A stretch of 64,000 bases of DNA from Tubulanus polymorphus (GCF_964204645.1 NC_134036.1:5238600-5302599); one strand, 5' to 3'; positions 1 through 25,804 are shown, counted from the first letter of the stretch. Made by a program: numbers and translations. The notes: generated by a model from the sequence alone, not told the origin.

Positions 1-1707
1 TGTTAAACCAGAGTGTCCACAATCAATAAAATAACCCTGACAGTTACAGCCTCGAGGACACGTGGTGCTACAGAAAGCCTCGTCATCAATTGTATGCTTG
101 CAATTCATGACACCATCGCAAACTTCAGTTTGAGGAATACAACGATTTTCCTGACCACATTTAAACATTCCCGGACATGAAAATCTCTCGCAGTTAAGTT
201 CATCTTCTGAATTAGGACAATCTGAATGACCATCGCACACCTGTCTGATCGGTATACAGTACGATGCAGGACATTTTACAGTACCAGCTGGACATTCAAA
301 TTCTTCACATCTCAATACGTGCTCAAGATTTCGACAAACTGGGAAACCATTCGTCATTCTCTCTAAAATACATCTGTTTCGTCTTGAATAACAATGAGGA
401 GAATTGAAAGAACATCTTTGTTCATCAGATTCTGTACAGAGATTTGTGAAGTTAGTCGTACAGTTGTTTTCATCGTTGCACTGAACAGTAGGATTTACTG
501 TAACGTTAGTAGTTGTTACTAATTCATCTTCTTCAAGGCTTCCACTACAATCCACGACACCATCCCGATACAAGTGAGAACTGATGCAATCTCCGCTGTT
601 ACACAAGAACCCCTGACACAGTTGAGCAGGACATCCCATTTCATCAGAGCCGTCTTCACAATTAGTGAATCCATCACATCTGTTGGATACGCTGATACAT
701 TGTCCACTGTTGCAGCGAAATTGCTTGGACAAACACGGGGGATGAATACAAGAGTTCTCATCAGAACTATCCACACAATCCTGTATGAAATCACAGAATC
801 CACTGATTGATATAACGTGACCATCATTGCATTGAAACTGACTGTGTAAATTTATATCCGTACAATTAAGTTCATCGTCACCGTGTTGACAGTCGTGTTT
901 AGTGTCACATACGCGATGGTCACTGATACATCTTTGATCGTTACATTTAAACTGCCACGATTTACAACCGCTTATAGAAGCTAACTCTTCATCAGTTACA
1001 TTGTATGAACACAAAACAGAATGCACTGTATCTGATTGATTATGCCAGGCTATCAATGCCCAATTAACTGATTGGTTATATGTTATTTCATTCCTGGTAA
1101 CAATTGGTTTTATTGTTCTCCAAAGGTTCCTAGAATCCTTACTTAGAATAGCGCCATATTGGTGCTGATATTGAAATCTGCTAATCAACTTTCCAACGTG
1201 ACTCAGATCCTGCATCTTCCCCATTCCACCACGGATGCTTTGACACATTTTTCTTGCACTTTTTACATCTGAGCTTTGATGTTTGTTCCAATCGGTCAAT
1301 ATCTGATAACATTTTCCAGCTATACCTAGCCAACCTATAATACAAGTTGAATTCATTAAAGAATTATTTAAAATGTGTGGTTTATTAGCTCGGAGTGTCT
1401 CATTATTTGTTGAATTGCTTTCTATTCCAGTTATATTTTTATTGATGTCGATTCTTTCTGTTTCGCAAATGAAACTCGTGTGAACCTCTTCGATTTCGCA
1501 GGGGAATCGAACCCAGTTCGCTGATCCTCGTGGATTATTCAGTATCATCGCTGTACACGGCATATTGACGTCGTTTATCGGTTGTTTCCTGAGAGGAGAT
1601 ATCAATCCTTGCATAACTTCTGGTATCGTGTCGTTATTTGTAGGTTCATACCACTCTGTGTAGCTCATTGGTTTTCCATCAGTCCACGTGTAATGACCAG
1701 TCCCAGG
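1..1707 (-). CDS. GRL101-like LGR GPCR copy 1, coding exon 3, truncated by the window start (C-type lectin C-half, lectin-like domain, LDLa repeats, LRRNT)
   Basis: Hand translation is open from acceptor TTTTCAG (intron 1708-1784) to base 1: PGTGHYTWTDGKPMSYTEW...CKSWQFKC...CPRGCNCQGYFIDCGHSGLT. Collinear with exon 3 of copies 2 and 3. Probably absent from the ORF track because no stop lies in the window. Confidence 0.9.
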
Positions 1708-1784
1708 CTGAAAAGTTAACTACAGTCATTTAGCAATGTGTACAATTCACATTTACTGCGGTATGGCCTAAAATGAAATACTAC

Positions 1785-3143
1785 CTGCAGTTTTAATCCA
1801 ATCATCATCATGAGCGCCTTCTGTGAATACGCTTCGTAGATCAGAGGTTTCATAGCGAATAACCTTTTAATGTTAATCACTTCCTGTTCTGAGTTGATAC
1901 TGAGTAGATGTCCCGCGTACTTCTGTTTACAATACAATTCAGCATTCTCCCAATTCAGTCGTCTATCTGTGATGTATTTTACGCATGAAATTCCCGAATC
2001 TAGGAATCCCGATTTGCATGTATTTTCAACCTGTTTTATTGGTAACTGCTGTTCTAGAACGTATTGTATGCGATATTTTGGTAGTCGGTCTATCACCTCA
2101 AACTGCATCCTACCCGAATGAAAGCTATAAAACGTAGTTCCCAGTTCAGCAAACGTATCACATAGTCTGATTACGTGTCTGGCACTGCGGCTCCGGTAAT
2201 ATACTTGCTGGATGAATGTGACGGAATCCAGTTTGTATACGGATTCCTTGATGCAGGACGTTTTGTCCATTGTCTTGATGACGAATCGGTAAAAGTAAAT
2301 TATTTCTGGCCATGTTGTCCACTGGAACACGATCGAGTATTGCAATGTAACAGTTGAAATTCCAGCTATTCCTGGATAATTCGGCGACTGCACGATTCCA
2401 CAGTCACCTTCACCTCGCCTTACCTCTCCTAAGATATCCTTCTTTAATGTTTGGCAGACACGCCGCAACTCAACAATGTACAGGGATCTAAAAAATAAGT
2501 CTGCCTTCCGGAATGTGACAGTGTGCAGTATGAGACTGCTATTGAGACGCTGAATACTGAGAGGCATGTCTGATCTACATTTTGCGATAATTACGTATGT
2601 CATAAAATCAGGCACGCACCCGCCAATTTCATATTCGTGCTGTGATATGACGTAAATTATGCGCAATGGAACTGCTCGGTTTTCTTGTGTAATCCTGAAA
2701 CAGCGTGACGTCTTTGGCACTGTCACTCGGTGTTCTCCTTCTCGTAGAGTATAACCGTCACAATCAGTCATACGAAACTTTAAACTTGCGTCCTTCATAT
2801 TGTGAACCATGTTCTTGGCTTGACAGTTATGAGTATAGCCTACTACAATGACCGGACCGCCCGATGTAATCAGACTGACGACTTTTCGTCGATAAACCCA
2901 TGTATCAGGACAATACGGACCGTATCGTCTAGCCGTGAAATTACCACCGTCATATATGTAAAATCCAGCATTTTCACAATTCGCGGACACCACCGTTAAT
3001 TCAAGTTCATGTTCATAGATCTCTACTTTCCATTTGAATTCGTGCATTATGACTCGATAATTCAATGTCCTCGACGCACATGGGAGCAGCATGGAATGTT
3101 GGAGGGAAGTTGGCAGGAAAACCATCCCTTCGTTGGGAATTAT
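1785..3143 (-). CDS. GRL101-like GPCR copy 1, coding exon 2 (CUB-like domains plus N-half of C-type lectin)
   Basis: ORF 1716..3125. Acceptor ATACTTTAG at 3144, donor CAG|GTAGTA at 1784. Motifs GFYIYDGG..YGPYC, CGIVQSPNYPG, NWENAELYC...GHLLSINS..E...IGL. Confidence 0.88.
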
Positions 3144-3798
3144 CTAAAGTATATTTAGGATAAGATTTTGGATAATTTAGTGATTTTGAGAGAAGGCCAC
3201 GCAAATAATCCCCTCGTTTCTCATCAGCGCTTTTTGGAAAAGTGACGAGGGAAGCAGGTCTTAATATTTACTTTTCGTATAAAAACAGAGAAATAAAAAG
3301 CTTTATTTCTAATTTCAAAAGTGACATATTCGTTTTTTTCCTATTCTCTACATCTACTTGGGACATTTTTGACGTAAACGACCTTGAATCAGGGCGTAAA
3401 GCCGAAGTAACAATTGAGTAGCGACCGTAAGACAAACACATATGTATAGGGGTATCTTGTTGTCCTTTGGGATGCACGGCGCAGTTTTTTACTTTTAAAA
3501 GAAATTAGAAACGAAAGCAGATTTCTGCATGCATGCGGAATGCGCATTTTCAAAGATTTTTGTCATTCGAAGATGACGCTCGCGGATAATGAGGCTGATG
3601 AGGCACGGGAGCTATATATTTTTGCGTGGCCTAAGAAATAATTGATTTCAGACATAGTCTGCGAACCCTAGACTTTGAATCTGAGGCCATCAATTATATG
3701 TCATTTTTGGGCCGCCTACCTTCATGTTATAAACTTTTGGGATTTTCGATTTCTTTCTGAAGTCTATTCTTTCTGAAGTCATTCAATGTTATACTCAC

Positions 3799-5034
3799 CG
3801 GATTATAGCTGACGCGTACATCTTCTACCGAAAGCGATTCCATTTTATAGTCTACTTCTATACGAGATTTTGTTGATTCTTGTCCCGTCAGAACGCACAG
3901 TACGACGATAAAACCGTCAGATTTAACATTCAGCGATTCCAGGTAGTTGTAACCGAGTAAAATATCAGTTCCTACAACGCGTAACCCTTCTTGTTTATAT
4001 ACGCCAATGACGTCACCGGATGTGACGAGATCACGCGTCCAGTTAAAGACGACGTACTGTAACACCTGCACTGTGATAGACCAGCAGTGAAAGTGTTTTG
4101 ATCGGGATATTACGTGTAAACTGTTGTCATCGGGAATGAGCACTCCCGACTCGTTATAAGAGATCTGAATCAACGGATTAGAGACGTTCCAATCTGATAC
4201 TTTATACATCTGAACTAAAAGTATAATCGTTGTCTTCCATAGACCCGATGTAGATATCGAGAATTTGTTTGTTTTAGTATAAAACGATGCCGGCTGTTGT
4301 CCGCGTTGTCCACCTAGAAGCGCTATCGGCTCACTGTTGGTATTCCAGCCATCATAGATACGAAATCCCGCCGCTGGATCGAGACGCAGGAAATAAGGGA
4401 GTATACGGTCAAACTCAACGAAGGTCAAATTCATTGCAAAACCTTTAGGTATGTCGTTCCATTCGAAAAACACATGACATTGATAAAAAAGGAACATCGT
4501 GAATTTGTGTCCGGTCGATGTTTTTAAATCAGTCACTCCAAATCTCCATCTATCGCAGTCGTGACTGATTTTCAATCGGCTTCGTCTTTCATAACGATAT
4601 ATGATATAAACCCGACTACCTCGCGCATCGTGGATGTTACTCCTAAACATCAACGAGATCGGATCTTTACGACGCATTTCATGTTTTCCATCGCCGCAGA
4701 ATCTGTTATCAGACTCGTGGACGAGAAGGTAGTTATCACTACAGAATATTGACGGCTCGATGTCGTAGTAAACTTGGACGTGAAACGTTTCCGGTAAAGA
4801 GCTGTTGATGAACCAACGACATTCAACACCGCGCGTTAACGAAGGGTAATTCGGCGAAACGATGTAACCGGACATAGAATCTACGGGGTACCACGTGTTG
4901 TTACAAGACGAACTCACCGTCACAGACGATTCCTCGATAGAGTCGGCTCGATCAGCGCGCGCGATGCGAACTTGACAGACGATCAGCGACGTTATAAACA
5001 GCGCTCTCAGTCGCTGCTCCATACCGAACAACAT
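3799..5034 (-). CDS. GRL101-like GPCR copy 1, coding exon 1 (signal peptide plus CUB domains)
   Basis: ORF 3727..5073. ATG at 5034 (or 5022, MEQRLRALF...). CUB motif SGYIVSPNYP..CRWFI. Canonical donor CCG|GTGAGT at 3798, 655-bp intron. Confidence 0.85.
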
Positions 5035-5079
5035 CACTGCGGTAGAATGAACGAAATTCTTGTCATCGTACACTGTCGG

Positions 5080-9001: not shown

Positions 9002-12000
9002 TTATACTCTATTTCTCCTGCGTTTAGTTTTTGCTCGTATGGATTTCATATCGATAGTCAGTATTGTGTAAAGAAGGGGGTTGAGGGACGAGTTGATCGG
9101 TAAGAAAAGAACCGCCAGCCAAGCCGCCACCTGATTCGGTATTTCTACCCGTAATACCGCGCAAAACTGAACGAGAATTAACGGCAGCCAGCAAAATAAA
9201 TTACACAGATTTATCACTAAACTCCTTCGTGCAAGAATCAGTTCTGTAGGGTCGATTCTTCCCGAACCAGACCTGCTTCCAGATACGAGTCTATACATTT
9301 GAACATAAGTCCCCATTATTGTTGCAAGCATTAACGAGTTGGATAATGAAAAAATAGCGAATGAATATTGCCAGGCGTTGACATCAATTGAAATTAAATT
9401 CATCGGTAAACAAACTCCGGTTGTACCGTAGAAATTACCTCCAAAGTATTGAAATGGTGTAAGAGGTAGTAATACAATGACACACAAGACAATCCAACAT
9501 GTGCAACAAATAATGCACACATATCTAAGAGATGTAATCGGGCTTCCAGAAAATGGATTCACGATATTTGAGAACCTATGACGCGTCATGACGAGCAAAA
9601 ATAATAACGACCCTTCACAGGAAATAGTTACCACTACTCCAGCAAGTCGACAAGATCCACTGTCCGTCCATGATTCCGAATTCAGAAAGTAGATACCTTT
9701 ATAAATATAATCGGCTCCAGCGATCAGAAATAAATACATAGACATCATAAAATCACACACAGCAATATTAATGATGATGATGTCTGAAGATGGATTTGAG
9801 GACGAAAATCGAATAGCTTTAACGCGAAGAGAAATGACAATTCCGTTAGCGATGGAACTGAATGAAGCGATAACCCAGATGATAGCTCTGAGGACTGTGT
9901 TACCCATCAGATCAGAACAGGAGGAAAATTGATCAGCTTCGGGAAGGCACTGGTCAACATTCGGAGCCATGCAGCAGAATTTATAAGCATCAGACATTAA
10001 AGTGACTAATGATGTCAGATTGTTGAAAACATTTCTGTCAACAGAAATAACTTTGTAGTTGTTAGTTAGATCAAGAATTGCAAGTGAAGTTAATCCAGAA
10101 AATGCGTATCGTGAAATAAGATTGATTCTATTATTGCTGATATTCAACAACTGTAGTTTATATAAACCCCTGAAAACATTCCTACCAAGTGTGAGCATCC
10201 TAAGTTCACGAAGTTCAAGAACTTTTAGTGACTTCAAATCTTGAAAGGTATCGCCCTCTAGATCACGTAGAGGATTTTCAGTAATCAATAACACCTTCAA
10301 ACTATATAAACCGGTGAATGTATTTGTAGATAACGATGTGATGTTGTTATATGTAAGGTCTAATGTATGTAGATTATGCAGGTTTGAGAAAGAGTTTGGG
10401 AAAATATAAGACAAATGATTTGATGAGATATTGAGCATGCGCAAATAGACGTATGAAAACAATGTCGACATGTCCAAGATGATTTTGTTATTTGACAAAA
10501 CTAAAACTCGAGTTGTTGCCGAGAAAAAACCAGTAATATTTCTTAAACCAGTTTTGATGCAATCGACCGAATGACCTTGGCACTTACAAGCTCTAGGACA
10601 CGTGACGTTACAGAAAGCCTCGTCATCAGTTGTGTGTTTACAATTTATGACACCATCGCAAACTTCAGATTGTGGAATACATCGATTTTCCTGACCACAT
10701 TTAAACATTCCTGGACATGAAAATGTCTCACAGTTTTGTTCATCTTCTGAATTAGGACAATCGGACTGACCATCGCACACCTGCCTGATTGGTATACAGT
10801 ACGATGCTGGACATTTTGCAGTACCAGCTGGACATTCAAATTCTTCACATCTCAATACGTGCTCTAGATTTCTACAGACTGGGAAACCATTTGTCATTCT
10901 TTCTAGAATACATCTGTCACGTCTTGAATAACAATGAAGAGAATTGAATGAACATCTTTGTTTATCAGATTCCGTACAGAGATTTGTGAAGTTAGTCGTA
11001 CAATAATTTTCATCATTGCACTGAACGGTAGGATTTACTGTAACATTAGTTGTTGTTACTAATTCATCTTCTTCAAGGCTTCCACTACAATCCACGACAC
11101 CATCCTGATACAACTGAGAACTGATACAGTCTCCACTGTTACACAGGAATCCTTGACACATTTCAGCTGAACATTCAATTTCATCAGAGCCGTCCTTACA
11201 ATTAGTGACTCCATCACATCTAGTAGACCTACTGACACACTGACCACTTTTACAGTGAAATTGTCCGGACAAACACGGGGGATGAATACACGAGTTCTCA
11301 TCAGAACCATCAACACAATCCCGTATGAAATCACAGAAACCACTTATAGATATGACCTGACCATCATCGCATTGAAACTGACTGTGTATATCCGTACAAT
11401 TGAGTTCATCTTCACCGTGTTGACAGTCGTGTCTGGTATCACACACGCGATGGTCGCTGATACATCTTTGATTGTTACATTTAAACTGCCACGATTTACA
11501 ACCGCTTATAGAAGCTAACTCTTCATCAGTTACATTGTAGGAACACAAAACAGAATGCGCTGTATCTGATTGATTATTCCAGGGTATCAATGCCCATTTA
11601 ACAGAATGATCATTAGTTATTTCAGCCCTGGAAACAATTGGTTTTATTGTCCTCCATAGATTACTAGAATCCTTACTTAGAATAGCGCCATATTGGTGTT
11701 GATAATGAAATATGCTAAGCAACTTTTCAACAAGAAGCAGATCCTGCATCCTCCCCATTCCACCATGGATGTTACGACACATTTTTCGTGCTCTTTTTAC
11801 ATCTAAGCTTTGGTGTTTGTTCCAATCGGTCAATATCTGATAACATTTCCCAGCTATACCTAGCCAACCTATTATACAAGTTGAATTCATTGTAAAATTA
11901 TCCAAAATGTATTGTTTATTATCGAGGAGTGTCACATTATTTGTTGAATTGCTTTCTATTCCAGATATATCTTTATTGATGCCGATTCTTTCTGTTTCGC

Positions 12001-12241
12001 AAATGAAACTCGTGTGAACTTCAACCATTTCGCAGGGGAATCGAACCCAGTTCGCTGATCCTCGTGGATTATTCAGAACCATCGCCGTACACGGCATATT
12101 GACGTCACTTATCGGTTGTTTTCTCATAGAAGATATCAACCCTTGAATAACTTCCGGTATCGTGTCGTTTTTCGTCGGTTTATACCACTCTGTGTAGCTC
12201 AATGGTTTCCCATCAGTCCACGTGTAATAACCAGTCTTAGG
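9002..12241 (-). CDS. GRL101-like LGR GPCR copy 2, coding exon 3 (lectin, LDLa repeats, LRRs, hinge, 7TM)
   Basis: ORF 9002..12202 extended to acceptor CTTTTCAG at 12242. LDLa (CDG..NC.DGSDE), LRRNT CPRACKC, LRRs, LGR hinge CCMAP..C.PEADQFSSCSDLM, seven hydrophobic segments with CWLP and NPLLY. Confidence 0.95.
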   Translation of the reverse strand, partial: PKTGYYTWTDGKPLSYTEWYKPTKNDTIPEVIQGLISSMRKQPISDVNMPCTAMVLNNPRGSANWVRFPCEMVEVHTSFICETERIGINKDISGIESNSTNNVTLLDNKQYILDNFTMNSTCIIGWLGIAGKCYQILTDWNKHQSLDVKRARKMCRNIHGGMGRMQDLLLVEKLLSIFHYQHQYGAILSKDSSNLWRTIKPIVSRAEITNDHSVKWALIPWNNQSDTAHSVLCSYNVTDEELASISGCKSWQFKCNNQRCISDHRVCDTRHDCQHGEDELNCTDIHSQFQCDDGQVISISGFCDFIRDCVDGSDENSCIHPPCLSGQFHCKSGQCVSRSTRCDGVTNCKDGSDEIECSAEMCQGFLCNSGDCISSQLYQDGVVDCSGSLEEDELVTTTNVTVNPTVQCNDENYCTTNFTNLCTESDKQRCSFNSLHCYSRRDRCILERMTNGFPVCRNLEHVLRCEEFECPAGTAKCPASYCIPIRQVCDGQSDCPNSEDEQNCETFSCPGMFKCGQENRCIPQSEVCDGVINCKHTTDDEAFCNVTCPRACKCQGHSVDCIKTGLRNITGFFSATTRVLVLSNNKIILDMSTLFSYVYLRMLNISSNHLSYIFPNSFSNLHNLHTLDLTYNNITSLSTNTFTGLYSLKVLLITENPLRDLEGDTFQDLKSLKVLELRELRMLTLGRNVFRGLYKLQLLNISNNRINLISRYAFSGLTSLAILDLTNNYKVISVDRNVFNNLTSLVTLMSDAYKFCCMAPNVDQCLPEADQFSSCSDLMGNTVLRAIIWVIASFSSIANGIVISLRVKAIRFSSSNPSSDIIIINIAVCDFMMSMYLFLIAGADYIYKGIYFLNSESWTDSGSCRLAGVVVTISCEGSLLFLLVMTRHRFSNIVNPFSGSPITSLRYVCIICCTCWIVLCVIVLLPLTPFQYFGGNFYGTTGVCLPMNLISIDVNAWQYSFAIFSLSNSLMLATIMGTYVQMYRLVSGSRSGSGRIDPTELILARRSLVINLCNLFCWLPLILVQFCAVLRVEIPNQVAAWLAVLFLPINSSLNPLLYTILTIDMKSIRAKTKRRRNRV

Positions 12242-12316
12242 CTGAAAAGATAAATTCAGTCAATTAGCAATGCGTACAATTCTCAATTAGTGTTGTGACC
12301 TAAAACAAGATACTAC

Positions 12317-13675
12317 CTGCAGTTTTAATCCGATCATCATAATGAGCGCTTTCTGTGAATATGCCTCTCTGATTAGAGGTTCAGTAGCGAATAATGTTTT
12401 GATAGAAATCATTTCCTTTTCTGAGTTGATACTGAGTAGATGTCCCGCGTACTTCTGTCTACAATACAATTCAGCATTCTCCCAATTCAGATGTTCATCT
12501 CTGATGTATTTAACGCATGAAATTCCCGAATCTAGGAATCCCGATTTGCATGTATTTTCAAGCTGTTTTATTGGTAAGTTATGTTCTAGAATGTATTGTA
12601 TGCGATATTTGGGTACTCGGTCTTTCACCTCGAACCACATCCGAGTAAAGATGAAACTGTAAAACGTAACACCAGGTTCAGCAAACGTTCCGCATAGTTT
12701 GATTACGTGTTGGGCATTGGCCTGTTTGTCACTGCTACTCTTGACGTAATTTACTTCCTGGACGAACGCGACGGACTCCAGTTTGTATCTAGATTCCTTG
12801 ATGCATGACGTCTTTTCCATTGTTTTGATGACGAATTGGTAAAATTGAATTCTCGTAGCTATCCATTGGACCTGGATCCTGTATTTCAATGTAACAGTCG
12901 AATGTCCAGCAGATCCCGGATAATTGGGAGACTGCACGATTCCACAGTCACCATCACCTCGCCTTACCTCATATGAGTTTTGCTTGTTTAATATTTGGCA
13001 CATACGCCGCAATTCAACGATGTACCCTAATCTAAAAAATAAGTCTACACTCCGGAATGTGACAGTGTGCAGTATGAGACTGTCATTGAGACGCCGAAAA
13101 CTGAGAGACATGGCGAATCTACATCTCGCTATAGCTACATACGTCATATATTCAGGCACGCATCCGCCAATTTCATATTCGTGCCGTGATATGACGTAAA
13201 TTCTGTGCAGAGGAACTGCTCGATTTTCTGGAGTTATCCTGAAACAGTTTGACGTCTGCGGCACTGTCACTCGGAGTTCTCCTTCTCGTAGAGTATATCC
13301 GTCACAATCACTAGCACGAAACGTTAAACTAGCTTTTCGCACATCGTGGACCAGGCGCTTCACTGGACAGTTATAAGTATAACCGACTACGATAACTGAT
13401 CCACCTGATGTAATCAGACTGGCGACTCTTCGTCGATAACCCGATGAACGAGGACAATACGGACCGTATCGTCTAGCCGTGAAATTACCACCGTCGTATA
13501 TGTAAAATCCAACATTTTCACAATTTACTGACACAACCGTTAATTCCAGTTCCCTCTCATAGACTTCAACTTTCCATTTGAATTCGTACATGGTGACTTG
13601 ATATTTCAACGTCTTCGACGGTGATGGAAACAGCGAGAAATATGGCAGCGATTTTGGCTGGTGTTTGTAAGAAAT
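12317..13675 (-). CDS. GRL101-like GPCR copy 2, coding exon 2 (CUB-like plus C-type lectin N-half)
   Basis: ORF 12287..13609 extended to acceptor CATTTTAG at 13676. Donor CAG|GTAGTA at 12316, 75-bp intron. 1,359 bp, the same length as in copy 1. Confidence 0.88.
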
Positions 13676-13771: not shown

Positions 13772-14983
13772 CTTAATGTTATTTAGTATTGTAATTGTCG
13801 GTATTGATTTCATTCTGAAGTCTATCCTTACAGTCGATTCTGTGATGTTCGGCCTCGTTAGAACGCACAGTATGACGAGAAATCCGTCAGATTTGAAACT
13901 CAGTGATTCCAGGTAGTTGTAACCGAGTAAAATATCAGTTCCTACAACGCGTAGTCCTTCTAGTTTATATACTCCAATGACGTCACCGGATGTCCTGAGA
14001 TCACGTGTCCAGTTGAAAACGACGTACTGTAACACCTGCGCTGTGATAGACCAGCAGTGTAAGTATTTCGATCGAGTTATTACGTGTAAACTGTTGTCAT
14101 CGGGAATGAGCACTCCTGACTCGTTATCAGAGACCTGAATCAACGGATTAGAGACGTTCCAATCTGATATTCTATACGTCTGGATCAAAAGTTCCGTCGT
14201 TGTTTCGCGTTGATTTGACGTAAATATCAATGACTTCTTAGTTTTGGTATAAAACGATGACGGATGTTGTCCGCTCTGTGCACCTATAAGGGCTATCGGT
14301 TTATTGCTGGTGTTCCAGCCATCATAGATTCGAAAACTCGACGCTGGATCGGTATCAAAGCCAGGGAAGACCAACTCAACGAATGTTAAATTCATCGCCA
14401 AACCACCTGGGATGCCGTTCCATTCGATAAACAATTGACAACGGGAATGGAGAAACAACGAGAATTTGTATCCGGTCGATGTTTTCAATTCATTCACTCG
14501 AAAATTCCGTTTATTGCAACCGTTTATTCTCAATCGGCTTCGTTCATAATGATATATGATATAAACCTGACTACCTCGCGCACCATTGACGTTACTCCTA
14601 AACATCAACGAAATCGAATCGTTACGAACGATGTCGTATTTTCCGTTACCGCAGATGGTATTCCCGTCAACGAATATATAGTTATTACTGCAAAATATTG
14701 ACGGCTCGATGACGTAGTAAACTTTGACGTGAAAAGTTCCCGGTAAAGAACTGTTGATGAACCAACGACATTCAACACCGCGCGTAAAGGAAGGGTAATT
14801 CGGCGAAACGATGTAACCGGACGTAGAATCTAGCGGGTACCAAGTGTTGTTACAAGACGAACTTACCGTCACAGACGATTCCTCGATAAAGTCTGCGCGA
14901 TCAGCGCGCGCGATGCGAACTCGACAGACGATCAGCGACGCTATAAACAGCGCTCTCAGTCGCTGCTCCATACCGAACAACAT
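13772..14983 (-). CDS. GRL101-like GPCR copy 2, coding exon 1 (signal peptide plus CUB)
   Basis: ORF 13757..14986. ATG at 14983. Donor AAG|GTAAAC at 13771, 96-bp phase-0 intron. Spliced product about 1,936 aa. Confidence 0.87.
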
Positions 14984-18449: not shown

Positions 18450-21400
18450 TCATTTTTCTGTTCGAGTTTGCCTGCGTTTGTTTTTTGCTCGTATGGATTT
18501 CATATCGATAGTCAGTATAGTGTAAAGAAGGGGATTGAGGGACGAGTTGATCGGTAAGAAAAGAACCGCCAGCCAAGCCGCCACCTGATTCGGAATTTCT
18601 ACCCGTAATACCGCGCAAAACTGAACGATAATTAACGGCAGCCAGCAAAATAGATTGCTAAGATTAATCACCAAACTCCTGCGTGCTAAAACTAGTTCTG
18701 TAGGGTCGATTCTACCTGAACCAGACCTACTTCCAGATACGAGTCTGTACATTTGGGCATAAGTCGCCAATATCGAAGCAAGTATGATTGAGTTGCATAA
18801 CGAAAAAATAGCGAATGAATATTGCCAGGCATTGACATCAATTGAAATTAAATTCATTGGTAAACAAACTCCGGTTGTACCGTAGAAATTGCTTCCAAAG
18901 TAAGGGATAGGTGTAAGAGGTAGTAATGCAATAGCACACAAAACAATCCAACATGTGCAACAAATCATGTAGACATATCTCGGAGATGTAATTAGATTTC
19001 TAGAAAATGGGTCGACGATATTTGAGTACCTATAACGTGTTATGATGAGTAAAAATACCAACGAACCTTCGCAAGAAATAGTGACCACGACTCCAGCAAT
19101 ATGACAAAGCAAACTGTCCGTCCAGGATTCTGAATGGAGGAAGTAGATACCTTTGTAAATGTAATCGGCTCCAGCGATCAGAAACAAATATATAGACATC
19201 ATAAAATCACACACAGCAACATTGATGATGATAATGTCTGAGGATGGATTCATGGGGGAGGATCGAATCGCTTGAATGCGAAGAGAAATTACAATTCCGT
19301 TAGCGAAAGAACTGAATGAAGCGATGACCCAGATGATAGCTCTGAGAACTGTGTTACCCATCAGATCAGAACAGGAGGAAAATTGATCCGCCTCGGGAAG
19401 GCACTGGTCAACATCAGGAGCCATGCAGCAAAATTTGTAAATATCAGACTTCAGCAAAACTAATGACGTCAGATTGACAAAAACCATTCTATCGGCAGAT
19501 ATAACCTTGTAGTTGTTCGTTATATCCAGGATTCTTAGTGAAGATATTCCAGTAAATGCGTAATGCGAAATATGATGGATTCTGTTATTGCTGATGTTCA
19601 ACGACTGTAATGAGGATAAACCTCGAAATACATTTCTACCAAGCGACAACAACCTAAGTCCCCGGAGGTCAAGTACTTTAAGTGACGTCAAATCTTTGAA
19701 GGCATCATCATCCAAATGACGTATTGGATTTTTGGTTATCGATAGTTGTTGTAAACTATACAAACCGATGAATGTATTTGTACTCAATGATGTGATGTTG
19801 TTGTGTGTAAGGTCTAATGTATATAGATTATGCAGGTTTGAGAAAGACTTGGGTAAGATATAAGACAATTCATTGTAGGAGATGTTGAGCGTTCTCACGT
19901 AGTTGTATGAATGGAATGTCGACAGGTCCAAAATAATGTCGTTATTCGACAAAATTAAAACTCGAGTTGCTGCGGAGAAAAGACCAGTTATATTTGTTAA
20001 ACCGGTATTTTCACAATCAATCAAATGACCTTGACACTGACAACCTCTAGGACACCTGGCGCTACAGAATGCCTCGTCATCAGTCGTGTGTTTACAATTT
20101 ACGACACCATCGCAAACTTCAGATTGTGGAATACATCGATTTTCCTGGCCACATTTAAACATTCCCGCACATGAAAGAGTCTCACAGTTTTGTTCGTCTT
20201 CTGAATTAGGACAATCTGATTGACCATCGCACATCTGCCTGATCGGTATACAGTAGGATACTGGGCATTTTACAGTACCAGCTGGACATTCAAATTCTTC
20301 ACATCTCAATACGTGCTCTAGATTTCTACAAACTGGGAGACCATTCGTCATTCTTTCTAAAATACATCTGTGACGTCTTGAATAACAATGGGGAGAATCG
20401 AAAGAACATCTTTGTTCATCTGATTCCGTACATAGATTTGTGAAGTTAGTTGTACAGTGGTGCTCATTATTGCAACTAACTGTAGGATTTACTATAACAT
20501 TAGTATTTGTTACTAATTCATCTTCCTCGTGGCTTCCACTACAATCCACAACACTATCCTGAAACAACTTAGAACTGATACAGTCCCCGCTGTTACACAG
20601 GAATCCCTGACATATTTCGGCAGAGCATTCCATTTCATCAGAGCCGTCCTTACAATTAGTGACTCCATCACATCTGGTAGACCTACTGACACATTGACCA
20701 CTTTTACAGCGGAATTGTTCGGACAAACATGGGGGATGAAAACACGAGTTTTCATCCGAACCATCCACACAATCTTGTATGAAATCACAGAAACCACTTA
20801 TTGATATAATCCGACCATCATTGCATTGAAACTGACCGTGTAAATTGATATCCGTACAATTGAGTTCATCTTCACCGTGTTGGCAGTCGTGTCTGGTATC
20901 ACATACGCGATGGTCGCTGATACATCTGTGATCGGTACATTTAAACTGCCACGATTTACAACCGCTTAAAGAAGTTAACTCTTCAATACTTACATTATAG
21001 GAACACAACACTGAATGCGCTGTATCTGATTGATTATACCACGGTATCAATTCCCACTTAATCGAATGATAATAAGTTAGTTCATCCCTGGTAACAAATG
21101 GTTTTATTGTCTTCCACTGATTGTTAAAGGCCTTGGTTAGGATAGCGCCATACTGGTGCTGATATTGAAATCTGGCAATCAACCTTTTAGCGTGAACAAG
21201 ATAATCTATCATCCCTATTTCACCGCGGATTCCATGACACATTTCACTTGCTTTCTTAATATCTAAACTTCGGTTTTTGTTCCATTCTGTCTGTATCTGG
21301 TAACAATGTCCAGCTATACTTAACCAACCTCTTGTACAAGTTGCATTTATTGAATTATCATTGAATATGTCTTGTTTACTAGTTTGGGATAGCAGGTTTT

Positions 21401-21701
21401 TTGTTGAATTTCTCTCTCTTCCAGTGATATTTTCATCGACATCGATTCTCCCCGATTCACAAATGAAACTCGTGTGACTCTCTTCGATTTCGCAGGGGAA
21501 TCGAACCCAGTTCGCTGATCCTCGTGGATTATTCAGTATCATCGCCGTACACGGCATATTGACGTCATTTATCGGTTGTTTTCTTAGAGGTGATATCAAT
21601 CCTTGAATATCTTCAGGTATCGTGTCGTTATTTGTTGGTTTATACCACTCCGTGTAGCTCAATGGTTTTCCATCAGTCCACATGTAATAACCTGTCCTAG
21701 G
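18450..21701 (-). CDS. GRL101-like LGR GPCR copy 3, coding exon 3 (lectin, LDLa, LRR, hinge, 7TM)
   Basis: ORF 18450..21749, whose N-terminal residues are intronic. Acceptor TTTCTTCAG at 21702. Same domain order as copy 2, with a near-identical TM6-TM7. Confidence 0.95.
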   Translation of the reverse strand, partial: PRTGYYMWTDGKPLSYTEWYKPTNNDTIPEDIQGLISPLRKQPINDVNMPCTAMILNNPRGSANWVRFPCEIEESHTSFICESGRIDVDENITGRERNSTKNLLSQTSKQDIFNDNSINATCTRGWLSIAGHCYQIQTEWNKNRSLDIKKASEMCHGIRGEIGMIDYLVHAKRLIARFQYQHQYGAILTKAFNNQWKTIKPFVTRDELTYYHSIKWELIPWYNQSDTAHSVLCSYNVSIEELTSLSGCKSWQFKCTDHRCISDHRVCDTRHDCQHGEDELNCTDINLHGQFQCNDGRIISISGFCDFIQDCVDGSDENSCFHPPCLSEQFRCKSGQCVSRSTRCDGVTNCKDGSDEMECSAEICQGFLCNSGDCISSKLFQDSVVDCSGSHEEDELVTNTNVIVNPTVSCNNEHHCTTNFTNLCTESDEQRCSFDSPHCYSRRHRCILERMTNGLPVCRNLEHVLRCEEFECPAGTVKCPVSYCIPIRQMCDGQSDCPNSEDEQNCETLSCAGMFKCGQENRCIPQSEVCDGVVNCKHTTDDEAFCSARCPRGCQCQGHLIDCENTGLTNITGLFSAATRVLILSNNDIILDLSTFHSYNYVRTLNISYNELSYILPKSFSNLHNLYTLDLTHNNITSLSTNTFIGLYSLQQLSITKNPIRHLDDDAFKDLTSLKVLDLRGLRLLSLGRNVFRGLSSLQSLNISNNRIHHISHYAFTGISSLRILDITNNYKVISADRMVFVNLTSLVLLKSDIYKFCCMAPDVDQCLPEADQFSSCSDLMGNTVLRAIIWVIASFSSFANGIVISLRIQAIRSSPMNPSSDIIIINVAVCDFMMSIYLFLIAGADYIYKGIYFLHSESWTDSLLCHIAGVVVTISCEGSLVFLLIITRYRYSNIVDPFSRNLITSPRYVYMICCTCWIVLCAIALLPLTPIPYFGSNFYGTTGVCLPMNLISIDVNAWQYSFAIFSLCNSIILASILATYAQMYRLVSGSRSGSGRIDPTELVLARRSLVINLSNLFCWLPLIIVQFCAVLRVEIPNQVAAWLAVLFLPINSSLNPLLYTILTIDMKSIRAKNKRRQTRTEK

Positions 21702-21777
21702 CTGAAGAAAATAAAGATTGACGTTAATGTATACTATTATTGATATCACACGTTACTCATCTTCAATAGTGATTTAC

Positions 21778-23154
21778 CTGCATTTTTAGCCCAATCATCA
21801 TTATGAACGCTTTCTGTGAATACGCCTCATTGATCAGAGGTTTTGTAGCGAATAATGTTTTAATAGAACTCATTTCCTGTTGTGAGTTGATACTGAGTAG
21901 ATGTCCCGCGTACTTCTGTCTACAGTACAATTCAGCGTTCTCCCAATTCAGACGTTTATCTCTGATGTATTTAACGCAGGAAATTCCCGAATTTAGAAAT
22001 CCTGATTTACAAACTTCATCGCCCTGTTTCTTAACCAACTGCTCTTCTAAAATGTATTGAATGCTGAACGTCGGTATTTTGTTTGTTGATTCGAGCCGCA
22101 GTTTCACAACCATCAAACTGTAAACTGTAACTCCCGGTTTGCTGTACGTTTCACATAGTTTTCTTTCATGTATCAGTATCGCGTGAAATAAGTGATTTGG
22201 TTCTCGGTAAGTGACTTCCTCAACCAGGACAACCGAGTTTTTATCTAATCTGAATCGTTTGATACATGGCGTCGTTTCTAAATACTTGATAATGAATCTG
22301 TAATATTGAACTCGGAATCTCTTAATAATGAAGCGAAAGTTATAGAATATAGTACTAACAGAAGTTCCCGGTGATACCGGGTAGTTAGGCGATTGCACGA
22401 TTCCACAGTCTCTATTTTCCTTGGGTACCTGATAAGTGTTATGTTTTTTCAATACGTGGCAAATGCGTCTCAATTCAACGATATACGGAAATCTACCGAA
22501 AAAATCCGCCGTCTTGATTTTCACAGTGTGCAGTACGTAGCTGTCATTGAGACGCTGAATACTGAATATTGTGTGACTTTTGCAGCCCGTTACCGATAAC
22601 GTATTATCAGGCGTGCACGAGCTGATTTCATATTCGTGCTGCGCAGTTACTTTGATTACATCGAAACGAACGCGTCGGTTTTCGGGTGTAATCCTGAAAC
22701 AACTTGACGTCCGAATTGTAACCTGGTGTTCACCTTCACGCAGAGTGCAACCGTCACAGTCAGTCGCACGCAACTTCAATCTACCCGTGCCCTTGTGCTT
22801 GCCTAGTGGGTTATGTATATAGCCCAGTACGACAACAGATCGTCCTGATGTAATCATGCCAACGAGACTTCGCCGATAACCCGATGAGCCCGGACAATAC
22901 GGACCGTATCGTCTGGCCGTGAAATTACCACCGTCGAATATGTAATATCCGGCATTTTCACAATTCTCTGACAGAACCTCTAACTCCAAGTTGCTTTCAG
23001 ATATTTCAACTTTCCATTTGATTTCATATTTGAATACAAGATAATTTACATTGTATTTCGACGATCTTAGGAGATACAGTGGGGATCCCTTTGCATATGA
23101 AGATGGAAGTAGTGATGAAATGGTCAATGTTCTTTCGGCCAGATTTTTTGAATT
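21778..23154 (-). CDS. GRL101-like GPCR copy 3, coding exon 2 (CUB-like plus C-type lectin N-half)
   Basis: ORF 21763..23202. Donor CAG|GTAAAT at 21777, 76-bp intron. Best in-frame acceptor is CATTTCAG at 23155, so the 5' boundary is less certain. Confidence 0.83.
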
Positions 23155-23384
23155 CTGAAATGCATAAGATGTATGATCAACTATTATTCCATCGTAAAAC
23201 AATACTTCATATCTGAACTATATTTTTCTTCGGGTGGAACAGAATCAAATCATATTTTGCCACCCTGTGTTGCACGCAGCCACTGGGAAAATTTCACTCT
23301 AGGCATAAAAGACTACTATGTGCACTTCATTTTGAAATAATACAAATGTTCGTTTATACAACCCCAAATGATTTCAGTACTTGC

Positions 23385-24605
23385 CGTAAGAATGCGTAGT
23401 CTTGACATCGATATTGATTGCATAGTGAAGTCGATTCTTACAATCGATTCTGTGATGTTCGGTCTCGTAAGAACGCAAAGTATAACTAGAAATCCGTCAG
23501 ATTTGACAATCATTAATTCCAGGTAGTTGTAACCGAGTAAAATATCAGTTCCTACAACGCGTAACCCTTCTAGTGTATAGACACCGATGACGTCCCCGGA
23601 CGTGACGAGATCACGTGTCCAGTTGAAGACGACGTACTGTAACACCTGCGCTGTGATAGACCAGCAGTGTAAGTGTTTCGATCGAGTTATTACGTGTAAA
23701 CTGTTGTCATCGGGAATGAGCACTCCCGATTCGTTATTAGAGATCTGAATCAACGGATTAGCGACGTTCCAATCTGATATTCTACACATCCGAACTAAAA
23801 GTTTAGTCGTGGTTTTGCGTTGGTTTAATGAAAAAATCATCGCCTTGTTAGTTTTGGTGTAAAACGATAACGGCTGTTGTCCGCGTTGTACGCCTAAAAG
23901 CGCTATCGGTTTACTGCTAGTGTTCCAGCCATCATAGATTCGATAACTCGCCAGTGTGTCGATTTTACCGAAAAACACTAGTTCCATATCCACATCGACA
24001 AAGGTCAAATTCATGCCTAAACCAACCGAGAGAGCATCCCATTTTAAAAATACTTGACAGATGCAACTCAAGAACATCGCGAATTTGTATCCGGTCCATG
24101 TTTTCAATTCATTAACTTGAAAACACCCTTTCCTACAGTTGTGACTGATTCTCAGTTGGCTCCTTTCATGACGGTAAATGATATAAACACGACCTCCTCG
24201 CGCACCATCGACGTTACTCCTCAACATCAACGAGATCGAATCGTAACGAACGACGTCGTATTTCCCCTTGCCGCAAAATATTTTTCCATCAACGAATAGA
24301 TAGTTACGTTTGCAGAATATTGACGGCTCAATGTTGTAGTAAACCTTGATGCGGAAAAATCCCGGCAAAGAGCTGTTGAGGAACCAACGACATTCAACAC
24401 CGCGCGTAAACGAAGGGTAATTCGGTGAAGCGATGTAACCGGACGTAGAATCTACAGGGTACCACGTGTTGTTACAAGACGAACTTACCGTCACAGACGA
24501 TTCCTCGATAGAGTCTGCGCGATCAGCGCAAGCGATGCGAACTCGACAGACGATCAGCGACGCTATAAACAGCGCTCTCAGTCGCTGCTCCATACCGAAC
24601 ATCAT
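23385..24605 (-). CDS. GRL101-like GPCR copy 3, coding exon 1 (signal peptide plus CUB)
   Basis: ORF 23316..24644. ATG at 24605 or 24593. Probable GC donor ACG|GCAAGT at 23384, homologous to the GT donors of copies 1 and 2. Spliced product about 1,949 aa. Confidence 0.82.
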
Positions 24606-25804
24606 CGCTGCGACAGAATGAACGAAATTCGCCAAGTTTAACACAATTGTTTTTTGGTCAGATCACGATCCGATTTCATCCAATCAGAAAATTCGCTCCG
24701 CCGAGTATATAATTCTTCATATACTTCCTTTAAAAATAGTATTTTGCAAATTCAACCGAAGTAAAAAGTAATAACGCAACAGAATAAGGAATCCTCGATT
24801 TTCGCAGTTATTCTTATCTCGGTTTGTGCAACTTTTTAATCTATTTATCTTGTTAATCTAATCATCAAACCTCATACACTGAAAACACCCGAGTTTTACC
24901 CGAGCAGAAATATTCAAATCTGAATTTCCGATTCGATATTACAACGAATTCATTTAATCAAATCATTTTTTTTCTGCACGTAGATTACGGTCGCGTTAGT
25001 TAAATATTCAAATCGCCGATATCAGATGAAAAATTGAATTCTACTCAATTTCATTGAGCACGAATCTCTGACATGAGGCTCGTCGAGTGTCGCAGATGTC
25101 GCAATGAAACGTTTAACCTAAAAAACGCATCAAATTTAGAAATTTTTAGCACACGCATTGCATCTGCAATTAGCGATTTCCCTCGAAGTGTCGCCTATAC
25201 TTTGGCGACTTCTGTTGTGTGCATTTGTTGCGTAGGAATTATCTTAGACTAATGCCACATCATCTGAACTGTCACTAAACACCCAACGAATCGTACAATT
25301 TGAAAAGAAATTGAAATAACTGTTTGTTTGGTATAGATGATAGCAGAATTCGCGTTGAAAAATGTATTCGGTCAAAATGAAAAGTCTACGTTTATTGGTA
25401 TTTTCTAGAGAATCGTTTGCTTGCATTTGCGTTGAAACAACTGAAATGAAAATTTGTTTCGAAGGATTTCTCACTGATGATATCGGCACAATTCTCCGGA
25501 TTCCAAGCTACATATAGGTTGTAAACATAGCTTCATCCGTATCTGAAACATCTTGCATATCTCAGCGTTTTCTGGAATCGACTGTAACCTAGGGCGATAC
25601 TGCATATGTATTACAGCAACGAGCAATGAGCTAAACGCCTCGAGGCAGTTACTGTATAAATGGTATAAACTTTCTGAACACGAAAGCGGTTTTCAGTATA
25701 TACTCATGTACCCGTCTAGATCAAATAAATTCTCACTGATTTCGTGCTCTTTGGTCCTACAGAAACAAGCATCTTAGCCCCTCAGCATCTCAACCGTTAT
25801 CCGG

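What the first reader, a model, noticed from the sequence alone, without database searches (positions are those of the whole stretch)
1..24644. Tandem array of about 1,940-aa CUB / C-type lectin / LDLa / LRR / 7TM receptors: candidate variable pattern-recognition or chemosensory GPCR system
Seen: the apparently separate ORFs join through phase-0 introns at homologous positions. Intron 2 (75-77 bp) splits a C-type lectin fold (IGLKLQ|PxTGYYxWTDG), so exons 2 and 3 must belong to one protein. Known: Lymnaea GRL101 and the RXFP-type LGRs combine LDLa, LRR and 7TM. Here about 1,000 aa of extra CUB-like and lectin modules sit in front, giving an ectodomain of about 1,600 aa built from recognition domains common in invertebrate immunity. 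Inference: a lineage-expanded receptor family coupling diverse ligand capture to one signalling module. I cannot tell how novel the full architecture is without a search.
Basis: partly seen in the sequence, partly recalled or inferred. Interest (0 to 1): 0.8.

Follow-up and report, generated by a model that had tools for sequence, protein, structure and literature searches.

The report
Giant GRL101-type receptor gene array
The window holds three tandem copies of a three-exon gene for a roughly 1,950-residue cell-surface receptor, from a family of at least 276 copies in a ribbon-worm genome. The family looks like a built-in sensor repertoire, but the receptor type, its domain layout and smaller tandem expansions of it are already known from other invertebrates.

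Summary
Three minus-strand copies are present; copy A's last exon runs off the window start. Each has three exons joined by phase-0 introns, and intron 2 splits one C-type lectin-like domain.

Each gene encodes a signal peptide, about six CUB-like modules, a lectin-like domain, a second degenerate lectin-like module, about six LDLa modules, about eight LRRs and a rhodopsin-type 7TM. The closest solved relative is the relaxin receptor RXFP1. This is a GRL101-type (type C2) LGR.

The genome is Tubulanus polymorphus or a very near relative. It holds at least 276 copies, and about three quarters of the 126 scored copies keep an intact exon-3 frame.

Divergence is mosaic. Three ectodomain blocks are saturated even at silent sites, while the other blocks are near-identical at silent sites. 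That points to block-wise gene conversion. dN/dS is 0.18-0.54 in every block, so there is no block-wide positive selection.

The CUB + lectin + LDLa + LRR + 7TM layout is not new. It occurs in brachiopod, sea cucumber, amphioxus, flatworm and abalone proteins. A 12-gene tandem cluster of lectin-bearing GRL101-like genes is published for Biomphalaria.

This scan already reported the same family seven times on other DNA of this genome. The scale is striking, but the kind is known. Function (chemosensory or immune sensing) is inferred only.

The parts
23385..24605 (-). Copy C exon 1 (407 aa): start codon at 24605, signal peptide, about three CUB-like modules. Variable block V1 is aa 151-270, at 23796-24155.
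   Evidence: ORF and translation; alignment of the three copies; AF2 model all-beta, with Foldseek top hits cubilin, neuropilin, C1r/C1s and MASP; block profile.
23155..23384 (-). Copy C intron 1, phase 0, 230 nt, with a GC-AG donor (ACG|GCAAGT ... tttcag|AAT).
   Evidence: A GT donor 57 nt upstream is a lower-scoring alternative.
21778..23154 (-). Copy C exon 2 (459 aa): about three CUB-like modules, including the CGIVQSPNYP motif, and variable block V2 (aa 181-360, at 22075-22614). Its last ~95 aa are the N-terminal half of the C-type lectin-like domain.
   Evidence: Pfam Lectin_C positions 2-45 of 107, 23.2 bits; Foldseek top hits neuropilin, cubilin, PCPE-1 and Kremen; alignment to P0070 residues 762-861.
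21702..21777 (-). Copy C intron 2, GT-AG, phase 0, 76 nt. It splits the lectin-like domain.
18450..21701 (-). Copy C exon 3 (1,083 aa plus stop). Lectin-like C-half 21450-21701; N-glycan-rich linker plus degenerate second lectin-like module (V3) 20982-21449; about six LDLa modules and a Cys-rich spacer 20022-20981; LRRNT, about eight LRRs and hinge 19377-20021; rhodopsin 7TM 18453-19376.
   Evidence: Pfam Ldl_recept_a, LRR_8 and 7tm_1; RXFP1 (7tmw_R) is the best solved relative, E 6.6e-74; alignment to P0070 residues 870-956; alignment A5.
13772..14983 (-). Copy B exon 1
12317..13675 (-). Copy B exon 2. Intron 1 is 13676-13771 (96 nt, GT-AG); intron 2 is 12242-12316 (75 nt, GT-AG).
9002..12241 (-). 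Copy B exon 3 (1,079 aa plus stop)
3799..5034 (-). Copy A exon 1
1785..3143 (-). Copy A exon 2. Intron 1 is 3144-3798 (655 nt, GT-AG); intron 2 is 1708-1784 (77 nt, GT-AG).
1..1707 (-). Copy A exon 3, first 569 codons only. The rest lies before the window, where G000:C12:5237058-5238005 is an intact 7TM inside a 1,087-aa open frame.
24606..24700 (-). Conserved proximal upstream region of copy C, with an inverted and a direct CCAAT box and a pyrimidine tract plus cag just before the ATG. Equivalent stretches lie at 14984-15080 (B) and 5035-5130 (A). Candidate core promoter, or the acceptor of a 5'-UTR intron.
   Evidence: The 25-mer has 38 genome hits and 0 in the control, all next to genes of this C12 subfamily except one on C10.
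25544..25776 (-). Conserved distal upstream element of about 200 nt, 0.5-1.6 kb 5' of the ATG. Equivalents lie at 15746-16056 (B) and 5900-6200 (A). Candidate promoter or leader exon; role unknown.
   Evidence: The 30-mer core has 34 genome hits and 0 in the control, all on C12 at 5.23-5.43 and 6.07-6.56 Mb, in gene orientation.

Best explanation
Window 1-24644 is the end of a tandem run of genes for giant type C2 (GRL101-type) leucine-rich-repeat GPCRs in a palaeonemertean genome.

Shown:
- Each unit of about 9.6 kb is one three-exon gene with its own conserved upstream region.
- It encodes a signal peptide, about six CUB-like beta-sandwich modules, one C-type lectin-like domain split by intron 2, a second degenerate lectin-like module, about six LDLa modules, about eight LRRs with a Cys-rich hinge, and a rhodopsin 7TM.
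- The 7TM keeps R3.50 (TRY), CWLP and NPLLY.
- The family has at least 276 copies in clusters on several chromosomes. About a quarter are pseudogenes.
- Every block is under purifying selection.
- The genes are mosaics. Three ectodomain blocks are anciently diverged, and the rest has been kept alike even at silent sites.

Inferred:
- The mosaic comes from birth-and-death duplication plus block-wise gene conversion.
- The family is a germline-encoded repertoire of sensors. Variable CUB-like and lectin-like blocks capture different extracellular ligands.
- As in RXFP1, the constant LDLa-LRR-hinge-7TM core converts binding into G-protein signalling.
- Whether the ligands are environmental or prey cues (chemosensation) or microbial or parasite molecules (immunity) cannot be decided from sequence.
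For: - Gene structure. All 20 sampled paralogues share the three-exon layout.
- Lectin-domain contiguity in an unspliced homologue.
- Domains: Pfam; CUB-type fold matches; RXFP1 is the best solved relative, at E 6.6e-74 against about 1e-33 for FSHR and LHCGR.
- Family size: the exact TM7 motif PINSSLNPLLYT gives 276 hits and 0 in the control. All 126 scored 7TM matches are at least 75% identical, and 92 of them have an uninterrupted exon-3-sized frame. A further large cluster lies on C9 and C22.
- Selection: NG86 dN/dS is 0.18-0.54 in all 14 blocks.
- Mosaic: amino-acid identity is 0.23-0.53 in V1-V3 against 0.8-0.95 elsewhere. Third-position identity tracks it. Among same-amino-acid codons, identical-codon fractions are 0.86-0.89 in the conserved exon-1 blocks (0.73-0.85 in the lectin-like, LDLa, LRR and 7TM blocks) against 0.56-0.62 in V1 and V2 (V3: 0.70). 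Block distance matrices correlate weakly. A 261-nt stretch of TM6-7 is 93-96% identical in DNA in the 40 best copies.
- Own promoter-like elements.
- Literature: type C2 LGR is GRL101 and is an orphan receptor (PMC11863921). A CTL-LDL-LRR-GPCR cluster is proposed as a pathogen sensor (PMC12297450). Nemertean class-A GPCR expansions are proposed to be chemosensory (PMC11886862).
Against: - No transcript, expression or ligand data were available.
- No block shows dN/dS above 1, so diversifying selection is not demonstrated. The variable blocks could simply be weakly constrained old segments.
- CUB assignment rests on marginal Pfam scores and on AF2 models with mean pLDDT of 49-50.
- DRY is TRY rather than ERY or DRY.
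- There is no RXFP1-like linker between the last LDLa and the LRRNT, so the RXFP1 activation mechanism may not transfer.
- Only 20 paralogues could be fetched, all from contig C12, so the mosaic statistics sample one part of the family.
Confidence: 0.75

Rival explanations
1. The family is an immune pattern-recognition repertoire, not a chemosensory one. The variable CUB-like and lectin-like blocks would bind microbial or parasite surface molecules on immune or epithelial cells, as proposed for the Biomphalaria SudRes2 GRL101-like cluster.
For: CUB, lectin-like, LDLa and LRR are typical invertebrate immune recognition modules. The SudRes2 GRL101-like cluster is associated with schistosome resistance (PMC12297450). 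The family shows tandem birth-and-death evolution with pseudogenes.
Against: The lectin-like domain is one of the most conserved blocks and lacks EPN/QPD and WND-type sugar-binding motifs (alignment A5). There is no block-wide positive selection. No expression data exist. In SudRes2 the validated variants lie in a neighbouring Zn-RING-IAP gene, not in the GRL101 genes.
Confidence: 0.3
2. The variable/conserved mosaic reflects only different strengths of purifying selection along the protein. On this view there is no gene conversion and no role for diversity: the copies are redundant amplifications of one hormone-type orphan receptor.
For: dN/dS is below 1 everywhere and is only moderately higher in V1-V3 (0.41-0.45) than elsewhere. 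GRL101-type receptors in other phyla are few in number and are treated as peptide-hormone receptor candidates.
Against: Silent sites differ strongly between blocks of the same gene pairs: dS is 0.08-0.4 against 0.8-1.0, and identical-codon fractions are 0.86-0.89 against 0.56-0.62. Protein-level selection cannot produce that. Keeping at least 276 copies, about three quarters of the 126 scored with an intact exon-3 frame, each with 40-60% divergent ectodomain blocks, is hard to square with redundancy.
Confidence: 0.1
3. The three ORFs of each unit are separate genes: a secreted CUB protein, a second secreted protein and a shorter GRL101-like receptor. On this view they are not one spliced gene.
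For: No RNA evidence was available. The only public model found for this species, P0001 (689 aa), lacks exons 1 and 2.
Against: Exons 2 and 3 have no start codon or signal peptide at their homology start. One lectin-like domain is divided between them and is contiguous in P0070. Phase-0 donor and acceptor pairs are kept in 23 of 23 genes while the intron sequences drift. Homologues of about 2,000 aa in other phyla carry CUB, Lectin_C, LDLa, LRR and 7tm_1 in one chain.
Confidence: 0.03

Closest known systems
Lymnaea stagnalis GRL101 and 'GRL101-like' type C2 LGRs (orphan receptors)
   Same: Several LDLa modules, then LRRs, then a rhodopsin 7TM. The best named database relatives are annotated GRL101-like (Haliotis 38%, Hetaerina 30%). 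Several of them also carry CUB and/or Lectin_C in front.
   Different: The nemertean genes carry about 870 aa of fast-evolving CUB-like modules with no BLAST-detectable similarity to the Haliotis N-terminus. They are present in at least 276 copies rather than a few. A phylogeny including Lymnaea GRL101 itself was not made.
Biomphalaria sudanica SudRes2 cluster of GRL101-like genes (PMC12297450)
   Same: Tandem cluster of paralogous lectin-LDLa-LRR-GPCR genes with truncated members. Proposed as extracellular recognition receptors.
   Different: That cluster has 12 genes in 440 kb, and the paper reports no CUB modules. Here there are at least 276 genes with about six CUB-like modules each, and the lectin-like domain is the conserved part, not the variable one.
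Relaxin receptor RXFP1 (type C1 LGR; PDB 7TMW)
   Same: It is the best solved-structure relative across LRR, hinge and 7TM (E 6.6e-74, query 63-509 to chain 245-689). It has LDLa N-terminal to the LRRs.
   Different: RXFP1 has one LDLa joined to the LRRs by a 32-residue linker needed for activation (PMC4837482 abstract). Here about six LDLa modules are present and the last one abuts the LRRNT directly. There is also an extra ectodomain of about 1,100 aa.
Lineage-specific class-A GPCR expansions of Lophotrochozoa, including nemerteans (PMC11886862)
   Same: Large tandem, lineage-specific class-A GPCR expansions in nemerteans, interpreted as chemosensory (Notospermus about 2,352 and Lineus about 1,009 class-A GPCRs).
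   Different: The terms LDL, leucine-rich, lectin and relaxin do not occur in that paper, and CUB appears only in reference DOIs, so ectodomain-bearing LGR-type expansions are not discussed. Only two nemertean genomes were analysed; the two it names are Notospermus geniculatus and Lineus longissimus.

Membership tests
Type C LGR (LDLa + LRR + rhodopsin 7TM; relaxin-receptor/GRL101 class) | Rhodopsin-family 7TM with class-A microswitches | tested here: met
   Pfam 7tm_1, E 3.5e-20, profile positions 2-260 of 260. The translation shows TRY at the DRY position, CWLP in TM6, NPLLY in TM7, and the TM3-ECL2 cysteines.
Type C LGR (LDLa + LRR + rhodopsin 7TM; relaxin-receptor/GRL101 class) | LRR ectodomain with Cys-rich hinge directly before TM1 | tested here: met
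   LRR_8 in three stretches, E 7e-29. There are about eight repeats and an FCCMAP...C...SSCSDLM hinge in the translation. The alignment to RXFP1 spans LRR plus 7TM.
Type C LGR (LDLa + LRR + rhodopsin 7TM; relaxin-receptor/GRL101 class) | LDLa module(s) N-terminal to the LRRs, which are absent from types A and B | tested here: met
   Ldl_recept_a, 4-5 significant stretches, E 2e-34. The feature definition is from PMC11863921.
Type C LGR (LDLa + LRR + rhodopsin 7TM; relaxin-receptor/GRL101 class) | Closer to a type C receptor than to type A or B receptors | tested here: met
   RXFP1 scores E 6.6e-74. FSHR, LHCGR and TSHR score 1e-33 to 1e-25 over the 7TM. LGR4 and LGR5 match the LRRs only.
Type C2 LGR (GRL101-type) | Multiple LDLa modules, as opposed to the one or two of the C1 receptors described in PMC11863921 | tested here: met
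   4-5 modules by Pfam and about six by eye, with canonical D-x-S-D-E acidic clusters.
Type C2 LGR (GRL101-type) | Phylogenetic placement with Lymnaea GRL101 rather than with RXFP/LGR3/LGR4 | not tested
Only the source names ('GRL101-like') of the best hits point this way.
CUB domain | Pfam CUB match above the gathering score | tested here: inconclusive
   Copy A exon 1 scores 21.7 bits against the cut-off of 21.4. Copies B and C score 18.1 and 17.4 bits. Exon 2 gives no hit.
CUB domain | CUB-type beta-sandwich fold | tested here: inconclusive
   Foldseek top hits for both exon models are multi-CUB proteins (cubilin, neuropilin, C1r/C1s, MASP, PCPE-1, Kremen) with probability 0.96-1.0. However, the models have mean pLDDT of 49.7 and 48.8. 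Only residues 150-275 of exon 1 and about 134-372 of exon 2 are moderately confident.
C-type lectin-like domain | A complete CTLD sequence signature across the exon 2/3 junction | tested here: met
The N-half scores 23.2 bits against the cut-off of 22.6. The two halves align to contiguous parts (762-861 and 870-956) of P0070, whose Lectin_C match covers profile positions 2-106 of 107.
C-type lectin (Ca2+-dependent sugar binding) | EPN/QPD and WND motifs of the primary Ca2+/sugar site | tested here: not met
   All 21 aligned paralogues read ..KQPINDVNMPC.. and ..NWVRFPC.. at these places. The Haliotis relative keeps QPD ... WHD. The motif definition is from general knowledge of CTLDs.
Diversified recognition-receptor family under diversifying selection | dN/dS above 1 in the variable parts | tested here: not met
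   Median dN/dS is 0.41-0.45 in V1-V3, and no pair has dN greater than dS. Site-level tests were not possible with the tools at hand.
Chemosensory GPCR repertoire | Large, tandemly arrayed, lineage-specific family with a pseudogene fraction | tested here: met
   There are at least 276 copies. Of 126 scored copies, 34 are interrupted. Clusters lie on C12, C6, C9, C10, C8 and others.
Chemosensory GPCR repertoire | Expression in sensory cells, with a ligand-tuned response | not testable with these tools
   No RNA or functional data could be reached.

The most novel reading that the evidence does not exclude
Tubulanus uses an LGR scaffold, otherwise a hormone-receptor scaffold, as a germline-encoded repertoire of about 300 macromolecule sensors. 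Old, divergent CUB-like and lectin-like cassettes would be kept apart while gene conversion keeps the signalling core uniform. Each gene would be driven by its own conserved CCAAT-box promoter, possibly for one-receptor-per-cell choice.
Probability: 0.3. Interest if true: 0.7.

Novelty: new member of a known kind. Interest (0 to 1): 0.45.

Why it matters
GRL101-type LGRs have been orphan receptors since they were first identified in Lymnaea stagnalis. A family of about 300 paralogues with a constant signalling core and three sharply variable ectodomain blocks is a natural mutagenesis series. It could show which part of such a receptor selects the ligand, and it might help in finding ligands for the family. 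It would also show that a hormone-receptor scaffold can be recruited for a large sensor repertoire, chemosensory or immune, in a phylum with almost no functional genomics. The mosaic of homogenised and anciently diverged blocks is a clear case of block-wise concerted evolution inside a coding sequence. Against this, the domain layout, the receptor class and smaller tandem expansions are already on record, and this scan has reported the same family several times.

Tried and rejected
- Joined model. All searches were run exon by exon, by reference.
- Pfam on the start of exon 3 alone, and on 21 paralogues of it, finds neither the C-half of the lectin-like domain nor the second lectin-like module.
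- BLASTP of exons 1 and 2 against the Haliotis GRL101-like protein found nothing significant.
- The exon-2 profile against 1.84 billion representative proteins gave only 33 hits at E up to 1e-3 and none below 1e-30. Own-genome records appear to be withheld, so this says little about other nemerteans.
- AF2 models of exons 1 and 2, built from alignments of 21-23 paralogues, were poor overall (pLDDT 49.7 and 48.8). Domain counts are therefore approximate.
The divergence statistics therefore rest on C12 copies only.
- The look-up of encoding contigs for the Tubulanus model P0001 found nothing on record.
- The ESM Atlas was busy.
- Separate genes: rejected, as set out under the rival explanations.
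- Block-wide positive selection: rejected.
- Upstream regions of copy C and of the first plus-strand gene being recent mirror copies: rejected. Only the short conserved elements match.

Full report
**What is there.**
ORF listing shows three groups of three long minus-strand ORFs, at 1716-5073, 9002-14986 and 18450-24644, about 9.6 kb apart. The rest of the window has no ORF of 120 aa or more.

Pfam places 4-5 LDLa modules, LRR_8 repeats and a complete rhodopsin 7tm_1 in the largest ORF of each group. The upstream ORFs give only marginal CUB hits, and the end of the middle ORF gives the first half of a Lectin_C domain.

**Gene structure.**
- I fetched 20 further paralogues from the same genome. 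All have the same three-exon layout.
- The donor CAG|gt of intron 2 sits at the same codon in 21 of 23 genes. The intron varies from 70 to 600 nt and is not alignable.
- For intron 1, a simple splice-site score picks a phase-0 solution in all 23 genes.
- An uninterrupted homologue, P0070, aligns with the end of exon 2 at residues 762-861 and with the start of exon 3 at residues 870-956. Both lie inside one Pfam Lectin_C match at 807-954. The two exons therefore encode one lectin-like domain.
No full-length protein was searched or folded, and lengths are sums: copy C is 407 + 459 + 1,083 = 1,949 aa and copy B is 1,936 aa.
- No RNA data could be reached, so splicing rests on this comparative evidence.

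**Domains.**
- AF2 models of exon 1 and exon 2 were built from alignments of 23 and 21 paralogues. They are all-beta but weak, with mean pLDDT of 49.7 and 48.8. Only exon-1 residues 150-275 and exon-2 residues about 134-372 are moderately confident.
- Foldseek nevertheless ranks multi-CUB proteins first for both models: cubilin, neuropilin a1a2, C1r/C1s, MASP, PCPE-1 and Kremen.
- Typical CUB starts (SGYIVSPNYP, CGIVQSPNYP) are visible. I therefore accept about six CUB-like modules, as a fold-level assignment only.
- Exon 3 begins with the C-half of the lectin-like domain. Next come an N-glycosylation-rich linker and a second, degenerate lectin-like module (C..GW....CYQI..W...A..MC). P0070 has a lectin-like stretch at the corresponding place.
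- After that come about six LDLa modules with a Cys-rich spacer, an LRRNT, about eight LRRs, the FCC...C...SSC hinge and the 7TM.
- The lectin-like domain reads QPI..ND and WVR where sugar-binding C-type lectins have EPN/QPD and WND. It is invariant there in all 21 paralogues. Sugar binding of the classical kind is therefore doubtful.
- The LRR-7TM core is closest to the relaxin receptor RXFP1 among solved structures: E 6.6e-74, against about 1e-33 for FSHR and LHCGR. This is a type C LGR, and with several LDLa modules it is of the GRL101 (C2) kind as defined in PMC11863921.
- A tree including Lymnaea GRL101 itself was not made.

**Scale.**
- The window is G000:C12:5238600-5302599, in a 268-Mb assembly.
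- The only close public protein, Tubulanus polymorphus LOC141911221 (P0001), is 99% identical to G000:C9:2808485-2809252. The genome is that species or a very near relative.
- A search with the 316-aa 7TM gave 126 scored matches, all at least 75% identical, out of 556 first-look candidates. Of the 126, 92 have an uninterrupted exon-3-sized frame, 17 have a stop and 17 have a shortened frame.
- A further large cluster lies on C9 (2.2-5.0 Mb) and C22.
- The exact TM7 motif PINSSLNPLLYT, back-translated, occurs 276 times, with 0 hits for the reversed control. That is a firm lower bound for the family.
- At about 10 kb per unit, the family takes up roughly 1% of the genome.
- Locally, four consecutive minus-strand genes end with copy C. 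Eleven plus-strand genes start about 12 kb beyond the window end.

**How the copies differ.**
- Mean pairwise identity is 70% for exon 1, 54% for exon 2 and 77% for exon 3, but it is strongly patterned.
- Three blocks are only 23-66% identical (per 30-aa window): V1 (exon 1 aa 151-270), V2 (exon 2 aa 181-360) and V3 (exon 3 aa 91-240).
- The first CUB-like module, exon 1 aa 271-360, the lectin-like domain, the LDLa region and most of the 7TM are 80-95% identical.
- NG86 dN/dS is 0.18-0.54 in every block and is never above 1 for V1-V3. All parts are under purifying selection, and block-wide diversifying selection is not supported.
- dS differs several-fold between blocks of the same gene pairs: 0.08-0.4 in the most conserved blocks (0.56-0.65 in the 7TM, LRR and exon-2 blocks) against 0.8-1.0 in V1-V3.
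- Third-position identity tracks amino-acid identity.
- Among codons that encode the same residue, the identical-codon fraction is 0.86-0.89 in the conserved exon-1 blocks against 0.56-0.62 in V1 and V2.
- Distances in different blocks correlate only weakly. A 261-nt stretch of TM6-7 is 93-96% identical at DNA level in the 40 best copies.
- Protein-level constraint cannot produce these silent-site differences. The simplest reading is block-wise homogenisation by gene conversion, which leaves old, divergent cassettes untouched.
No formal recombination test was available.

**Upstream regions.**
- Each gene of this C12 subfamily keeps about 100 nt directly 5' of the ATG. This stretch has an inverted and a direct CCAAT box and ends in a pyrimidine tract plus cag. 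The 25-mer has 38 genome hits and 0 in the control.
- Each also keeps an element of about 200 nt, 0.5-1.6 kb upstream. Its 30-mer core has 34 hits and 0 in the control, all beside genes at C12 5.23-5.43 and 6.07-6.56 Mb.
- These fit independent transcription units with a shared promoter type. Whether the distal element is a leader exon is open.

**Comparison with what is known.**
- The layout is not new. Proteins with CUB + Lectin_C + LDLa + LRR + 7tm_1 and about 2,000 aa exist in Lingula anatina, Apostichopus japonicus, Holothuria leucospilota, Lytechinus pictus and Diadema setosum. Anneissia japonica has a related protein with CUB, LDLa, LRR and 7tm_1 but no Lectin_C listed.
- The same layout occurs in Branchiostoma. 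The Macrostomum lignano hits carry CUB (P0069, P0100) or Lectin_C-LDLa-LRR-7tm_1 (P0068) on separate models, and the Haliotis protein has CUB-LDLa-LRR-7tm_1 with only the C-half of a lectin-like domain visible in its sequence. Most of these proteins are named GRL101-like or left uncharacterised.
- The nemertean CUB-like region has no close relative among 1.84 billion representative proteins: 33 hits, none below 1e-30. Own-genome records seem to be withheld, so this does not bear on other nemerteans.
- In the literature, a 12-gene tandem cluster of lectin-LDLa-LRR-GPCR 'GRL101-like' genes in Biomphalaria sudanica has been described and proposed as a pathogen-sensing system (PMC12297450).
- GRL101-like transcripts are enriched in starfish sensory tentacles (PMC6267866).
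- Large class-A GPCR expansions are reported for two nemerteans, without mention of LGR-type ectodomains (PMC11886862).
- I found no paper on this family in Tubulanus.

**Earlier findings of this scan.**
After I had formed my reading, a look-up showed seven earlier follow-ups of the same family on other stretches of this genome. They reached the same conclusions: GRL101-type, about 270-300 copies, variable outer modules, recombination-left patches, and the snail precedent. My independent tests agree with them. What this report adds is the silent-site control at identical-residue codons, the contiguity proof for the split lectin-like domain, and the conserved upstream elements.

**Verdict.**
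This is a lineage-expanded family with a variable ectodomain on a constant signalling core, but the architecture is widespread and the concept is published. A sensor-repertoire function is plausible, though chemosensory and immune roles cannot be told apart, and it is unproven.

Noticed in passing
window 42400-55900 and 59200-60340: A-rich 51-bp satellite (consensus TTAATTGAAGACAATAACTAATTTCAAAGATTCAAAGCCTAAACAATGAGT, 27% GC, strong AT skew). It has 102- and 153-bp higher-order periods and a 6.76-kb higher-order duplication (42888-43530 repeats at 49648-50290). A short patch in inverted orientation lies at 59.2-60.3 kb.
   Followed up: partly
window 39000-63900: Large palindrome-like spacer between the minus-strand and plus-strand receptor runs. 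Inverted arms lie at 39856-40583 / 62187-62914 (95%) and 40928-42249 / 60573-61894 (96%), with a third copy at 47688-49009. Inner arms lie at 56380-56936 / 58170-58726 (97%). Small repeated ORFs (MAMKMNSDLKSH..., MSRALCPGKDSS...) occur in both arms. It may mark the breakpoint of an inverted duplication of the array, or a foldback-type element.
   Followed up: partly
window 38725-38972: 44-nt tandem repeat, 5.6 copies, 88% matches.
   Followed up: no
window 5900-6200, 15746-16056, 25544-25776 and 5035-5130, 14984-15080, 24606-24700: Two conserved non-coding elements lie upstream of each receptor gene: a distal element of about 200 nt, and a proximal pair of CCAAT boxes. Both are restricted to the roughly 35-40 genes of the C12 5.23-5.43 and 6.07-6.56 Mb subclusters. 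Other subfamilies (for example L010, L016, L019, L020) have a different proximal sequence.
   Followed up: partly
L010 (G000:C12:4763051-4771551): This paralogue has a longer exon 3: a 1,280-aa open frame with overlapping alignments over the LDLa region. That suggests an internal duplication of LDLa modules.
   Followed up: no
L002 (G000:C12:6248248-6256748) and L007 (G000:C12:6140398-6148898): Sampled paralogues with a break: L002 has a frame interruption in exon 3 (465-aa frame), and L007 has a stop inside exon 2. Several copies near C12 3.73-3.98 Mb each carry one TGA in the 7TM; whether it lies at the same position was not checked. If shared, the duplicated units were already pseudogenes.
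   Followed up: no
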